Below, one piece after another: positions 52,611-55,779 of a stretch of 64,000 bases of DNA (within the stretch, counting starts at the first letter, position 1; each line of letters begins with the position of its first letter). Origin of the DNA: Macrostomum lignano (Eukaryota). Both the position numbers and the translations under genes were made by a program. The notes under the pieces were generated by a model. That model was not told the origin of the DNA and did no database searches. It was given only the letters and a program-made list of their open reading frames with translations. The stretch covers positions 248,001 to 312,000 of the forward strand of contig NIVC01001237.1 in assembly GCA_002269645.1 (NCBI GenBank), read 5' to 3'.

Positions 52611-53504
52611 TTCCATGCCATTGCCATATACCATATTAATATTCAAATATTAGCCTAAAGCATATAGGCCTAGCCAATAAGGTCTAGCCATCAGAACTCC
52701 ATGGATGGATATAGATAGGTCCTAATTTAGTTAGGCCTAACTTCTTAACAGATAAGGATTGCATATGATATATCTTTGATATCTAGTAATATTAACCAGG
52801 GCCTATTCAATATTAGAAAAGGCTTAAATTAAAAGATCATTGAAGCTCTTGATCTAATGGGTAAGAGGAGATAGAACAATAGACATTTAATGAAAATTGC
52901 CATTGGCATTGTCAGTTTGGCAGTTTAAAAGCTTTTGTTAAGGGAACTCTTGTCAAAAAGGTTGAAGACTCAAGCAATGAAACTTAAGTTTTATAGGCCT
53001 ATAGGCCTATCTTAAAAATTTATATTAATTATTTTAGACTTCGATTAAGCCCTATTAAACTGATTCTTATTTTAACCAGATAGCTTTTCAGATTTATTCA
53101 GCGAATTAGTCATTTAGTGAAAATTGCCATTGGCATTGTCAGTTTGGCAGTTTAAAAGCTTTTGTTAAGGGAAGCTTCTGTTGTAGGACAGTAGGTCGTA
53201 TTTAAAATTGTTATAACATTGCGGAAAAAGAAAAACTGCGGCTAGGCTTAATACTAAATATTTATAGCACTCAACTAAGCAAACACTCGTGTGCTGTGCT
53301 CCTGCTTTTTGTCATCTATTAAATTTAACTAATTATTGTCGTTTTAGCCAAAAAATTAAAATTCAGATTTCAACTCAGAGAAAAACTAAAACAAAAATGC
53401 TTTTCTACATTAGGTCCATAAAAATTTTCAATAAATAGTAACAAAAAGTACAAGTGAAGAGTTCTTAAAAACGTGAAATAAAGAAGAAGTAAGACAAAAA
53501 AGGT

Positions 53505-54582
53505 AGACGGCCGTAAAGACGGTCTCTGACTGTTTTTACCCTGGTTGCCTCTCTTGTAGCCTGTCTAAGGGTTGTGCGCAATCCGATTGGCTATGCCAAT
53601 TTCTAAGGGTCCGCCCCGGAGGGGCTGTGCCCGTTCTAAAAATAAACCCTATTTCTATAATGTACATTCCAATTATTTGGCCCTCGGCCTTGGGTTAGGG
53701 GTGGTGTACCTGGAGTGAGTTGGAGATCTGGACTGCAGTGTGGCTAGAACGGGACTTGAGCCCCCCGGTCGCACCCGCCCTGCAGGAAAGACGACCATTC
53801 ACTAAAGTGTACGGTAGAGCCCAGTTGATGCCAGCCCTGAGGCTGAGCCCCGGGTCAGGGTTCAGGTGCTCCTCCCCCAATTAAATTCCGGTGGTCACTT
53901 TCCAATCTTTGGAGTTATGAGCTCTGCCCTACCTGCCCGGTCCATCCTGCTCTGTCCTTGGTCCATCTGCTGGCTCCTCTGGTTGTCTCCCTGCTTTTGT
54001 GTCTTGGCTCTCATCTCTGACAGTGGATTGGAGTCCTGGGAAGGAAGTTCGTCCCGAATCGGGGAAAACCGGCTGAGTCCGGTTTCCTCTTGCTCCTTGT
54101 GCCCCTCCCCCCTTGGCCTGGCCTCCAATATTGAGCTGGATAGGCGATGCCCTTGGGTTGGTAGCAATAGAGGCGTATCAATATCCGCCTAGAGTCTCCC
54201 CCTCGGATACAAGCCTTCCAGACTCTCTCCAATAGTTAGCCCTTTCCAAGACTTCTGGGTTTTCCCGCTCTTGGACGGCTTTTTCAGTAATTCCAATTCT
54301 GTTTTTCGCGCACTCCCAAGGACTTGTCTGCTGGGGGGTGGCCTGGGTGGACTCGGTCCTAGCACCATCCCTGATTCCACTGTTGGTTTGGCGGTGTCTT
54401 GTACCGTAGATTTGGGTCAACTCGCCCACCCGCGCTTTGAGCCGGGTCCAATCCAATTGCATCCATGGGGTATCTCGGGCCCTGGACAGATAATGCCTTG
54501 GCCCCTGGAAGTGCCCCTCGCGGCAGAGCCCACCCCAGGGCTGATCCGCGGGTCCCCTAGGACCCTTTCGTTTAACAACAAC
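53505..54582 (+). mobile_element. Non-coding retroposed element (1078 bp) with a spliced-leader-like 5' head
   Basis: 14-bp TSD aagacaaaaaaggt (53491-504 and 54583-96); 3' hairpin GGGTCC-ccta-GGACCC (54550-65) then taacaacaac tail; GC-rich relative to AT-rich flanks; 5' end ccgtaaagacggtctctgactg. Confidence 0.75.
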
Positions 54583-55779
54583 AAGACAAAAAAGGTCAGT
54601 ATTATTTTTTCACTGTTTTTTAAACTGGATCAGTTTTCTTATTAATATGTCAATTTGTGTTGCGCAGCATGTTTGGTCTCTTGCTTGTGGGCCTGTAGGT
54701 TGATTTTTTTACAAATATTTTGTCTACTTTGTGTATCTGTGTAGGCCTAGGCCTAGGGGCCTAGGCTAGGGCCTACTTTTACTTTATTATCTTTAGATAA
54801 TAAACAACTTATTTTTTCAGTAACTTTTTGATTCCATTTGATAAATCTTTTTTTCTGGGTAAAAGATTCTTTCTGAAAGCCAGTGAATTTTAGGCAGTGC
54901 TTATTTAGCCGGCACCGGCCAAATAAGTTCGCTACTATTTAACCGGCAGTCCTGCCGGTGTAGGACCAAGACCGCCACACACCAAGACTGCCACACTTAG
55001 GGGAGCTAGGGGGAGGAATTTGGCTCGCCATGTTATTGGATGGTGCTGGGGGAGGGGTGAGATGGGGACGACAAGGCCGCGAGAGAGGAACCGGTGAGCG
55101 GGCCGGGCGGACCTGAGTGAGCCTTCCTCGTTTTTTCATTCAATTTGAATTGTAAAGGAACTATCAATCCTAAATAAACAGCTACTATTAGTAGAAAGCT
55201 GTGAAAAAAGGCTCTTGACTTAACTGCATTCTTAATTCGCAGTTTCGAATGTGGTCCTTGAGTTGGTTATCATTGTTATAATTTGTTATAATGTGAGTTT
55301 TCATGTGTGATTCGAGCATGTCCGATTGCCAATGCAAATTTGCCAATTCGATCGCAGGCAGGCAGGCTAACATGCACATGTATTTAGAGGTTACGGGATG
55401 GTGAGTCGTGCAGCCATACCGTTTTTATTGCGTGTACATGTACAGGCTTCCTATAAAAACGACACTAAAGTAGTCCGTGATTTGTACGAGCTGGGCCTCG
55501 ATCGAGTTGTACGAGGCCTGTTATAAGCAGCTTTCATGCTCACTTTAAATCACTCAATCACTAACTCACTCACTCTCTCACCCTCTACATGTATCTTACT
55601 CGCTCACTCACTCACTTGCACACTGATCACTCACTCAAAAGTTACTCTAATCGCTCTTAATACAATCAAAATGTATGGCACAAAAATGCATGCACATATC
55701 ACATGTACAGTAATCGTTTACTTTGATTTCGGATGTTCTCCCTGTTTATTAAAAAATACGTTCTAAAACTATTTTTGAC

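What the first reader, a model, noticed from the sequence alone, without database searches (positions are those of the whole stretch)
53491..54596. Retroposed 1.08-kb element that starts with the 5' half of the flatworm spliced leader: candidate SL-RNA-gene-linked retroelement family
Seen: an exact 14-bp TSD (aagacaaaaaaggt), a 3' stem-loop and CAA tail (target-primed reverse transcription hallmarks), no RT ORF, and at the 5' junction AGACGG followed by CCGTAAAGACGGTCTCTGACTG (53511-53532) with the CCGT-aaag-ACGG hairpin. Recalled, to be verified: the Macrostomum lignano SL is CCGTAAAGACGGTCTCTTACTGCGAAGACTCAATTTATTGCATG, i.e. 21/22 identity that stops halfway, without the terminal ATG. Established: nematode NeSL and trypanosomatid CRE/SLACS/CZAR retrotransposons insert into SL RNA genes; flatworm SLs end in AUG. 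Inference: not an ordinary processed mRNA (which would carry the whole SL), but the off-target retrocopy of a transcript starting at an SL RNA promoter and reading into an element inserted mid-leader, or an SL-derived SINE head. I know of neither being described in flatworms.
Basis: partly seen in the sequence, partly recalled or inferred. Interest (0 to 1): 0.82.

Follow-up and report, generated by a model that had tools for sequence, protein, structure and literature searches.

The report
Retrocopy capped with half a spliced leader
A 1.08-kb non-coding retroposed insertion in a Macrostomum-type flatworm genome really does begin with the first 23 bases of the trans-splicing leader RNA; it is most simply a one-off chimera made when a reverse transcriptase hopped onto a leader-bearing RNA, and a leader-headed mobile family could not be tested here.

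Summary
An exact 14-bp target-site duplication (53491-53504 and 54583-54596) brackets a 1078-bp GC-rich insert. The insert ends in a 6-bp hairpin plus TTTCGTTT(AAC)3. It starts with a 5-nt filler (AGACG) and then 22/23 bases of the Macrostomum spliced leader (53510-53532).

I confirmed the leader from three papers. I also recovered two genuine SL RNA genes from public contigs (L001, L003). Both begin GCCGTAAAGACGGTCTCTTACTG and continue ...TTGCATG|GTAAG, hairpin, AUUUUUAG, hairpin. Nothing after SL position 23 is present in the element.

The body has no coding signal and matches no Pfam or Rfam family. A T5 run at +24 rules out a Pol III SINE. A 250-nt core of the body has a diverged relative in a Macrostomum lignano gene model.

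The source genome could not be reached, so I could not test whether other copies share the SL head.

The best reading (about 0.45) is one retroposition event in which the reverse transcriptase switched onto the 5' end of an SL-bearing RNA, as in U6-L1 chimeras. The main rival (about 0.3) is a family-level SL-derived head, either SINEU-like or a master copy in an SL locus.

Partial leaders next to LINE/LTR elements are already reported in parasitic flatworms. Interest is moderate.

The parts
53491..53504 (+). Left target-site duplication, AAGACAAAAAAGGT
   Evidence: Exact 14/14 with 54583-54596. These are the only two matches in the window, and 0 of 100 shuffles gave 2.
53505..53509 (+). 5-nt filler AGACG between the TSD and SL position 1. 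It repeats SL positions 8-12 found 12 nt downstream.
   Evidence: Read from the sequence. The upstream flanks of the real SL genes are ...ctcttt/G and ...ttcttt/G, so AGACG is not SL gene flank. The idea that it is a templated insertion or a second short jump is inference.
53510..53532 (+). Head derived from SL RNA positions 1-23, GCCGTAAAGACGGTCTCTgACTG. It is 22/23, with T19 changed to G.
   Evidence: Local alignment to the SL RNA genes of L001 and L003. Published SL sequences.
53513..53539 (+). Predicted 5' hairpin: GUAAAGACGGUC / UCU / GACUGUUUUUAC, 12 bp including 2 G:U pairs. It spans the junction between the SL part and the body.
   Evidence: MFE folds. It is only weakly significant: 2.4-5% of random 17-mers appended to the head fold as well.
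53533..54549 (+). Non-coding GC-rich body. It starts with a T5 run, and the first ~100 nt are strongly structured.
   Evidence: No Pfam, Rfam or protein hits. Coding statistics are not significant. T-runs are listed. The fold z-score is -2.9. No similarity to SL RNA positions 24-109.
54030..54279 (-). Core of the body with a diverged relative in Macrostomum lignano. It matches residues 242-325 of gene model UniRef100_A0A1I8F838 when read on the minus strand, with one frameshift.
   Evidence: phmmer E=1.8e-4 against 1.84 billion representatives. Identity of the hit. tblastn at 49% identity, E=7e-11 within the window, plus a frameshifted continuation.
54550..54565 (+). 3' hairpin GGGTCC-CCTA-GGACCC
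   Evidence: Present in both the MFE and the centroid fold.
54566..54582 (+). 3' tail TTTCGTTT(AAC)3, with no poly(A)
   Evidence: Sequence. AACAACAAC occurs at only one other locus in the window, three overlapping matches at 11389-11412.
54583..54596 (+). Right target-site duplication, AAGACAAAAAAGGT

Best explanation
This is a single, fairly recent retroposition event made by the machinery of an endonuclease-nicking (APE-type) non-LTR retrotransposon.

Proposed steps:
1. The bottom strand of an A/T-rich target was nicked.
2. A non-coding ~1.05-kb RNA carrying a LINE-type 3' end (hairpin plus (AAC)n) was reverse-transcribed from that nick.
3. Before joining the upstream DNA, the reverse transcriptase switched template onto the 5'-terminal 23 nt of an RNA bearing the spliced leader. 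That RNA could be the abundant SL RNA itself, an SL-capped mRNA, or the SL cap of the same RNA if it had been trans-spliced, in which case the jump was intramolecular.
4. It copied that RNA to its cap, added or copied 5 more bases (AGACG), and the cDNA was joined to the target, giving a 14-bp duplication.

The product is a bipartite chimeric retrocopy analogous to U6-L1 and U1/U2-LINE chimeras.

Shown: the TSD, the insert boundaries, that the head equals positions 1-23 of the true SL RNA, the non-coding body, and the LINE-like tail without poly(A).

Inferred: the template switch, the type of LINE, and which SL-bearing RNA was the acceptor.
For: - One perfect 14-bp TSD encloses head and body together, so they integrated as one cDNA.
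- The head begins at the first transcribed base of the SL RNA gene, as defined by two independent genes and three published leaders. Starting at the transcription start of a cellular RNA is, from my own knowledge of the U6-L1 literature, the hallmark of template-switch chimeras.
- The body ends in a hairpin plus a microsatellite-like tail, without AATAAA or poly(A). It has no coding capacity. That fits a non-autonomous element or a 5'-truncated LINE 3' region rather than an mRNA.
- The window has no second copy and no other SL 5' half.
- snRNA-LINE/Alu chimeras made by template switch, and 3'-truncated tailless snRNA retrocopies, are documented (PMC4494074).
- Partial leaders adjoining LINE/LTR copies are frequent in other flatworms (PMC12582326).
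- A degraded non-LTR RT (YADDI motif) in the window shows that LINEs have been active in this genome.
Against: - End-to-end jumps normally land on the 3' end of the acceptor and copy it whole. Here only 23 of 45 (exon) or 109 (SL RNA) nt were copied, so an internal landing site or a 23-nt SL fragment has to be assumed.
- The head has one mismatch (T19G) although the TSD is perfect. That is slightly easier to explain if the head had evolved as part of a master element.
- The junction lies within a predicted 12-bp hairpin built from SL positions 4-15 and the first bases of the body. A random jump does not predict this, but the hairpin is only weakly significant.
- The partner LINE, and therefore the idea that the body is a LINE-dependent RNA, was not identified.
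- The body core has a relative in M. lignano, which shows a family exists. Its 5' ends are unknown.
Confidence: 0.45

Rival explanations
1. The SL head is a family feature. One possibility is a SINEU-like non-autonomous retroposon whose head derives from the 5' part of the SL RNA gene. The other is the reader's model: transcripts start at the promoter of an SL RNA gene that carries a master copy inserted after SL position 23, and they are retroposed in trans elsewhere.
For: - The head starts at SL +1 and stops at one discrete point.
- There is one substitution in the head beside a perfect TSD.
- The substitution strengthens a 5' hairpin that uses G:U pairs, which is strand-specific.
- The first 130 nt are unusually structured, z = -2.9. 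They include hairpin-AAUUUCUAAGG-hairpin (53586-53625), which loosely recalls the hairpin-AUUUUUAG-hairpin layout of the real SL RNA.
- The body belongs to a sequence family also present in M. lignano.
- snRNA-headed SINEs (SINEU) exist despite external Pol II promoters (PMC4494074).
- Flatworms carry target-specific NeSL-clade (R5/LIN) elements (PMC4640811).
- From my own knowledge, unverified here: in Ascaris the SL sequence itself is an intragenic promoter element, and SLACS transcripts start at the interrupted SL gene's +1.
Against: - Only one copy was seen, so junction sharing is untested.
- This copy is not in an SL locus.
- There is no RT or REL-endonuclease, and the TSD and target look APE-type.
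- The body has no significant similarity to SL RNA positions 24-109 (P = 0.18-0.93).
- The hairpin significance is marginal.
- The six-frame query found no called proteins from other copies. This is weak evidence, because the genome is evidently not in that database.
Confidence: 0.3
2. The insert is a retrocopy of a trans-spliced non-coding or retroelement transcript that originally carried the full 45-nt leader. The segment from SL 24 into the 5' part of the transcript was then lost, either when the RT skipped across a structured region or through a later genomic deletion.
For: - Calvelo et al. interpret partial leaders next to LINE/LTR copies as trans-spliced retrotransposon transcripts that integrated.
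- About 30% of M. lignano genes are trans-spliced.
- The region is highly structured.
Against: - 5' truncation, the usual cause of partial leaders, removes the 5' end of the leader, not its 3' half.
- It needs an extra event in an insert young enough to keep a 14/14 TSD.
- No acceptor-site remnant or ATG end of the leader is present.
Confidence: 0.13
3. The first ~125 nt (53510 to about 53635) are a full-length copy of an undescribed SL-like small RNA that shares only its first 23 nt with the SL RNA. A LINE-type 3' part is fused to it by a canonical end-to-end template jump.
For: - Five predicted hairpins and a Sm-like AAUUUCUAAGG between two of them.
- An A-rich stretch with AATAAA at 53636-53646, just after the last hairpin.
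- End-to-end jumps normally copy the acceptor whole (my own knowledge).
Against: - No sequence similarity to the real SL RNA beyond position 23.
- No GU donor in a good context and no terminal AUG.
- No Rfam hit.
- There is no independent evidence that such an RNA exists.
Confidence: 0.07
4. The SL match is a chance resemblance, or the region is an assembly artefact.
For: None beyond the fact that only one assembly was seen.
Against: - A 22/23 match exactly at the 5' junction of a TSD-bounded insert.
- My arithmetic gives a chance expectation of about 1e-7 per window.
Confidence: 0.02

Closest known systems
Chimeric retrogenes from LINE reverse-transcriptase template switching: U6-L1, and U1/U2/U3/5S/7SL fused to L1, Alu or a pseudogene (Buzdin 2002; Garcia-Perez 2007, as summarised in PMC4494074)
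   Same: One TSD surrounds a two-part insert. The 5' part starts at the transcription start of an abundant small nuclear RNA. The 3' part is a retroelement-type sequence with the 3' end used for priming.
   Different: The 5' partner is the SL RNA or spliced leader, and I found no paper describing that as a chimera partner. Only its first 23 nt are present rather than the whole small RNA. The tail is (AAC)n with a hairpin, not poly(A). The host is a flatworm.
SINEU: crocodilian SINEs with U1/U2 snRNA-derived heads (Kojima 2015, PMC4494074)
   Same: The head comes from the 5' part of a Pol II snRNA-type gene that has no known internal promoter. Oligo-T runs inside exclude Pol III transcription. 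Heads are thought to be added by template switch.
   Different: SINEU is shown to be a family, with shared junctions and subfamilies. Here a single copy is known and the body is about 1 kb.
SL-gene-specific non-LTR retrotransposons: NeSL-1 (nematodes) and SLACS/CRE1/CRE2/CZAR (trypanosomatids). Related target-specific R5/LIN elements occur in flatworms (PMC4640811).
   Same: A retroelement sequence abuts an interrupted spliced-leader exon, so that the 5' part of the leader precedes the element.
   Different: Those elements encode RT and a restriction-like endonuclease and sit inside SL genes with the rest of the gene downstream. This insert has no ORF, lies in an unrelated A/T-rich site with a 14-bp TSD, and has no SL sequence on its 3' side.
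Partial-leader loci associated with LINE/LTR elements in parasitic flatworms (597 loci, Calvelo et al. 2025, PMC12582326), and relict SLs in retroposed dinoflagellate genes (Slamovits & Keeling 2008, cited there)
   Same: A fragment of the leader lies next to a retroelement or retrocopy, outside any functional SL RNA gene.
   Different: Those loci are attributed to trans-spliced transcripts that were reverse-transcribed. That predicts the 3' (ATG) end of the leader is retained. Here the 5' half is retained and the 3' half is missing.

Membership tests
Target-primed (non-LTR-mediated) retroposed insertion | Target-site duplication of variable length flanking the insert | tested here: met
   Exact 14-bp TSD, with only two matches in the window.
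Target-primed (non-LTR-mediated) retroposed insertion | 3' end with poly(A) or a LINE-type microsatellite tail; no terminal inverted repeats or LTRs | tested here: met
   Hairpin plus TTTCGTTT(AAC)3. The two ends share no inverted or direct similarity, and the element has no internal or external repeat.
Functional SL RNA gene | Complete leader ending in AUG, followed by a GU donor paired in stem-loop I | tested here: not met
   Only SL positions 1-23 are present. The second half is absent from the window. Compare the true genes in L001 and L003.
Functional SL RNA gene | Sm-type site between two 3' hairpins, homologous to the known SL RNA | tested here: not met
   No significant alignment to SL RNA positions 24-109 (P = 0.18-0.93). 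There is only a loose architectural resemblance at 53586-53625.
SL-gene-specific non-LTR retrotransposons (NeSL-1, SLACS, CRE, CZAR) | Encodes reverse transcriptase and a restriction-like endonuclease | tested here: not met
   No Pfam domain in six frames. No protein homologues. Coding statistics are not significant.
SL-gene-specific non-LTR retrotransposons (NeSL-1, SLACS, CRE, CZAR) | Inserted in an SL exon, with the remainder of the SL gene downstream of the element | tested here: not met
   The 3' flank is the TSD and unrelated A/T-rich DNA.
SL-gene-specific non-LTR retrotransposons (NeSL-1, SLACS, CRE, CZAR) | Other copies occupy the same site in other SL gene copies | not testable with these tools
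The two SL genes recovered from environmental contigs are uninterrupted.
Template-switch chimeric retrocopy (U6-L1 type) | A single TSD encloses both parts, and the 5' part starts at the transcription start of a cellular RNA | tested here: met
   The TSD encloses head and body. The head starts at SL +1, preceded by a 5-nt filler.
Template-switch chimeric retrocopy (U6-L1 type) | The 3' part is a 5'-truncated LINE/SINE or cDNA whose other copies lack the 5' partner | not testable with these tools
   The body is unidentified and there is no second copy in the window. Only a diverged 250-nt relative in an M. lignano protein model is known.
Classical Pol III SINE | tRNA-, 7SL- or 5S-derived head with an internal promoter, and no early oligo-T terminator | tested here: not met
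   No tRNA or Rfam hit in the element. A T5 run lies at 53533, 24 nt from the 5' end, with further T4-5 runs downstream.
SINEU-like SINE with snRNA-type head | Many copies share the same head-body junction | not testable with these tools
   One copy only.
Processed pseudogene of a trans-spliced mRNA | Full or 5'-truncated leader joined at its ATG end to an mRNA body with poly(A) | tested here: not met
   The leader is truncated at its 3' side. There is no poly(A) signal at the end or poly(A) tail, and no coding body.
Penelope-like element or retrozyme | Hammerhead ribozyme motif, or a GIY-YIG/RT ORF | tested here: not met
   No hammerhead or other Rfam hit at E up to 10. No Pfam hit.

The most novel reading that the evidence does not exclude
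The 23-nt SL head is an inherited part of a Macrostomum retroposon family. That would be either a non-autonomous element with an SL-RNA-derived head (an SL analogue of SINEU, perhaps using the leader as an intragenic promoter or cap/Sm-recruiting module), or the dispersed progeny of a master copy lodged at position 23/24 of an SL RNA gene and transcribed from its promoter. The second case would be the first SL-locus-associated retroelement in flatworms.
Probability: 0.28. Interest if true: 0.7.

Novelty: new member of a known kind. Interest (0 to 1): 0.42.

Why it matters
If this is a one-off chimera, it is a clean flatworm example that the SL RNA, like U6 or U1/U2 in vertebrates, can be captured at the 5' end of LINE-made cDNAs. 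It would also help explain the many 'partial leader next to a retroelement' loci that complicate SL RNA gene annotation in flatworms.

If the head is shared by a family, it would add the SL RNA to the short list of small-RNA genes that have seeded SINE heads, or it would reveal an SL-locus-targeting element in Platyhelminthes. Either outcome would bear on how such elements are transcribed without a Pol III promoter.

In practice, the true SL RNA genes recovered here (L001 and L003, the latter linked to a U1 gene) give a reference for annotating macrostomid SL loci.

Tried and rejected
1. Finding other copies through protein databases. The 108-aa ORF and a concatenated six-frame translation gave no hits. 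The adjacent MULE ORF gave only one 54%-identical Logan hit. Exact look-ups of window ORFs and of P0003 found nothing. The source genome is therefore not in those collections, and genome sampling was impossible.

2. Pattern scans.
- The SL/body junction in genome contigs gave 0 hits.
- The SL 5' half, the 3' hairpin, and two degenerate patterns for the conserved core gave 0 hits in viral contigs.
- The SL scans of metagenome contigs and genome contigs each returned one genuine SL RNA gene but no element copy.

3. Body as the rest of the SL RNA with a deletion. Rejected: Smith-Waterman scores fall within the shuffle range.

4. Body as a decayed coding sequence. Frames +1 and -0 have few stops, but not significantly few (P about 0.1). 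There were no Pfam hits. The phmmer hits P0002 and P0004 are repetitive proteins unrelated to the element. P0003 matches at the DNA-family level with a frameshift.

5. Known RNA families (hammerhead, snRNA, SL): none found.

6. Minus-strand orientation of the element. Rejected, because it would place an antisense leader at the 3' end with no tail.

7. Snap-back origin of the 5' hairpin. Complementarity does not continue beyond 12 bp, and the hairpin is only marginally better than random.

8. A covariance model of the SL RNA was not built. With two near-identical genes it would only re-find the first 23 nt.
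Full report
**What is in the sequence**

Window 53491-54596 contains an exact 14-bp direct repeat, AAGACAAAAAAGGT, at 53491-53504 and 54583-54596. These are the only two matches in 64 kb even with one mismatch allowed, and no shuffle of 100 gave two. 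The bases just outside the repeat differ, so it is exactly 14 bp.

Between the repeats lie 1078 nt with GC 0.56, set in flanks of GC 0.38. When the insert and one repeat are removed, the flanks join into continuous A/T-rich DNA.

The insert ends in the hairpin GGGTCC-CCTA-GGACCC (54550-54565), then TTTCGTTT, then (AAC)3. There is no poly(A), and no AATAAA lies near the end. It has no terminal repeats, and no second copy or fragment exists elsewhere in the window.

These are the marks of target-primed reverse transcription by a non-LTR element that recognises a structured, microsatellite-tailed 3' end. That last step is my inference from general knowledge of LINE biology.

**The spliced-leader head**

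The insert begins AGACG, then GCCGTAAAGACGGTCTCTGACTG (53510-53532).
- Grudniewska et al. 2016 give CCGTAAAGACGGTCTCTTACTGCGAAGACTCAATTTATTGCATG for M. lignano (PMC5173321).
- Ustyantsev and Berezikov 2021 use the 35-nt 3' portion. They describe a 109-bp SL RNA gene with a GTAAG donor and an Sm-like site, present 8 times in the deduplicated genome (PMC8629364).
- Wiberg et al. 2023 assembled GCCGTAAAG...ATG for M. cliftonense and CGTAAAG...ATG for M. hystrix (PMC10468722 supplement).

I then recovered two genuine SL RNA genes from public contigs by pattern search. One is L001 615-723, from metagenome contig Ga0302322_100095745. The other is L003 1589-1697, on JAGQZA010000190.1, a eukaryotic contig mis-binned into a Flavobacteriaceae MAG.

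Both read GCCGTAAAGACGGTCTCTTACTGCGAAGACTCAATTTATTGCATG|GTAAGACACCG..., then a hairpin, AUUUUUAG, and a second hairpin. The predicted fold pairs leader positions 11-23 with the donor region, which is the canonical stem-loop I.

The element therefore carries positions 1-23 of the real SL RNA at 22/23 identity, with 18 bases exact and T19 changed to G. By my arithmetic the chance expectation is about 1e-7 per window. The 17-mer search found a single exact hit against 0.09 expected even at 3 mismatches.

Nothing after position 23 is present. The second half of the leader is absent from the whole window. The first 150 nt of the body align to SL RNA positions 24-115 no better than shuffled sequence (P = 0.93 and 0.18).

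The 5-nt filler AGACG is not SL gene flank, since the genes have ...cttt upstream. It repeats SL positions 8-12.

**The body**

- The longest ORF lying wholly inside the insert is 108 aa, and a 124-aa ORF runs out into the flank.
- None of the six frames hits Pfam.
- Neither the 108-aa ORF nor a six-frame concatenate finds any protein among 5.8 billion clusters.
- Two frames have few stops, but within what first-order Markov simulated sequences give (P about 0.1). The longest open stretch is ordinary (P = 0.38).
- No Rfam family, including hammerheads and snRNAs, is found at E up to 10.
- A T5 run starts at 53533, 24 nt from the 5' end, and more T4-5 runs follow. Transcription of the whole unit by Pol III from its head is therefore excluded, as argued for SINEU (PMC4494074).
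- The first 131 nt are more structured than shuffles, z = -2.9.
- The first hairpin (53513-53539) pairs SL positions 4-15 with positions 19-30 across the junction, using two G:U pairs, and the T19G change adds its closing pair. However, 2.4-5% of random 17-mers placed after the head fold as well, so I treat it as suggestive only.

A full phmmer scan of 1.84 billion representatives with the minus-strand frame gave one meaningful hit, P0003. This is UniRef100_A0A1I8F838, a Macrostomum lignano gene model. Its residues 242-325 match window 54279-54030 at 49% identity with one frameshift. That pattern indicates DNA-level homology of a ~250-nt core rather than a conserved protein. The body therefore belongs to a sequence family that also exists, in diverged form, in M. 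lignano.

**Context and limits**

The window is eukaryotic and consistent with a macrostomid flatworm. It contains:
- two EF-1alpha copies, CAND1/TIP120 and HMG-box exons, and CUB domains
- a MULE transposase ORF
- a decayed non-LTR RT with a YADDI motif
- many 20-33-bp tandem arrays

Its proteins are not on record in the accessible collections. I therefore could not sample the genome, find other copies, find the partner LINE, or find an empty site. This is the main limit of the evaluation.

**How it most likely arose**

One TSD encloses both the head and the body, so they entered as a single cDNA. The head starts at the first transcribed base of the SL RNA.

This is the pattern of chimeric retrocopies formed when a LINE reverse transcriptase leaves its first template and continues on another RNA up to that RNA's cap. 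Such chimeras are documented for U6, U1, U2 and other small RNAs, alongside 3'-truncated tailless snRNA retrocopies (PMC4494074).

The SL RNA is an abundant nuclear small RNA, and about 30% of Macrostomum mRNAs carry the leader, so it is a likely acceptor. I give this reading about 0.45. It includes the variant in which the body RNA was itself trans-spliced and the jump was intramolecular.

Its weak points are three. The landing site is internal (23 of 45 or 109 nt). The head has one mismatch beside a perfect TSD. The junction lies in a hairpin.

**Rivals**

The discrete stop point, the mismatch, the structured 5' region and the existence of relatives in M. lignano are compatible with this. 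Flatworms also have target-specific NeSL-clade (R5/LIN) elements (PMC4640811). However, this copy is not in an SL locus, encodes nothing, and has an APE-type TSD and target. Junction sharing is untested. About 0.3.

(b) A trans-spliced transcript was retrocopied and then lost SL 24 onward (about 0.13). This is the explanation Calvelo et al. offer for 597 partial-leader loci next to LINE/LTR elements in parasitic flatworms (PMC12582326). Ordinary 5' truncation would remove the opposite half of the leader.

(c) The first ~125 nt are a whole unknown SL-like small RNA (about 0.07). The architecture is suggestive, but there is no sequence or database support.

(d) Chance or artefact (about 0.02).

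**Comparison and novelty**

In how it works, the closest known cases are the snRNA-LINE template-switch chimeras. In structure it resembles a SINEU head.

It fails the tested defining features of several classes:
- a functional SL RNA gene
- SL-specific non-LTR retrotransposons (no RT/EN, not in an SL gene)
- a Pol III SINE
- a processed pseudogene of a trans-spliced mRNA
- a Penelope-like element

I found no paper describing the SL RNA as the 5' partner of a chimeric retrocopy or as a SINE head. The general association of partial leaders with retroelements in flatworms is published.

I rate this a new member of a known kind, with moderate interest (0.42). The more novel family-level reading keeps a probability of about 0.28. 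It is cheaply testable by a genome-wide BLASTN, which I could not run.

Noticed in passing
window 36473-36521: A second SL-related sequence: a decayed copy of the whole 45-nt leader plus GTAA (ctataaagatagtctcttactatgaagacccaatttattacaag|gtaa). It is 84% identical to the true SL gene, and most differences sit at CpG positions (CG to TA or TG). The downstream SL RNA part is not recognisable. It is probably an old SL RNA pseudogene or retropseudogene.
   Followed up: partly
L003 1121-1283 and 1589-1697 (JAGQZA010000190.1): A contig labelled 'MAG: Flavobacteriaceae bacterium' carries a eukaryotic U1 snRNA gene (Rfam 151.7 bits) about 300 bp upstream of a complete Macrostomum-type SL RNA gene. This shows that U1 and SL RNA genes are linked in some macrostomid, and that the MAG is contaminated with flatworm DNA.
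   Followed up: partly
L001 615-723 (Ga0302322_100095745): An environmental metagenome contig carries an intact macrostomid SL RNA gene. Its leader is identical to the one in L003, but the loops of stem-loops II and III differ. A partial duplicate of the leader start (gccgtaaac) lies 17 nt upstream.
   Followed up: partly
window 1224-2256 and 17147-18179; also 795-1142 and 15326-15673: Two EF-1alpha copies at 97.3% nucleotide identity, and a second duplicated block at 99.4%. Together these point to a ~16-kb segmental duplication within the window.
   Followed up: partly
window ~11400-12000, minus strand: A degraded non-LTR reverse transcriptase (LGYADDIGLL motif at about 11858) with frameshifts. 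It gave no Pfam hit in the one ORF tested and shares no 3' end with the element. A (GTT)n/(AAC)n run lies at 11389-11412.
   Followed up: partly
window 55780-57000, plus strand: A 406-aa ORF with a MULE transposase domain lies 1.2 kb downstream of the insert. Its only database relative is 54% identical, from a Logan assembly of SRR8670881.
   Followed up: partly
window 36877-38682 and 12887-13922: A large near-perfect inverted repeat (670-nt arms, 95% complementary) has related arms 23-25 kb away, with shared 51-nt termini at 13872-13922 and 36810-36860. It looks like two copies of a foldback-type or TIR DNA transposon, immediately next to the SL relic.
   Followed up: no
window 29160-29879: A tRNA-Leu(AAG) gene (29800-29879) directly abuts a near-perfect 20-bp tandem array (29160-29800). 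The window holds many other 20-33-bp arrays, for example 47241-48400, 24028-24900, 10005-10733, 26817-27750 and 58100-62300.
   Followed up: no
window 53586-53625: Inside the element's 5' region there is a perfect palindrome, ATTGGC-TAT-GCCAAT, which amounts to two inverted CCAAT boxes. It is followed by TTCTAAGG and a GCCCC-GGA-GGGGC hairpin, with TATAAT-like and AATAAA motifs 30-60 nt further on. This could be an internal Pol II promoter or an Sm-like module. Neither idea was tested.
   Followed up: no
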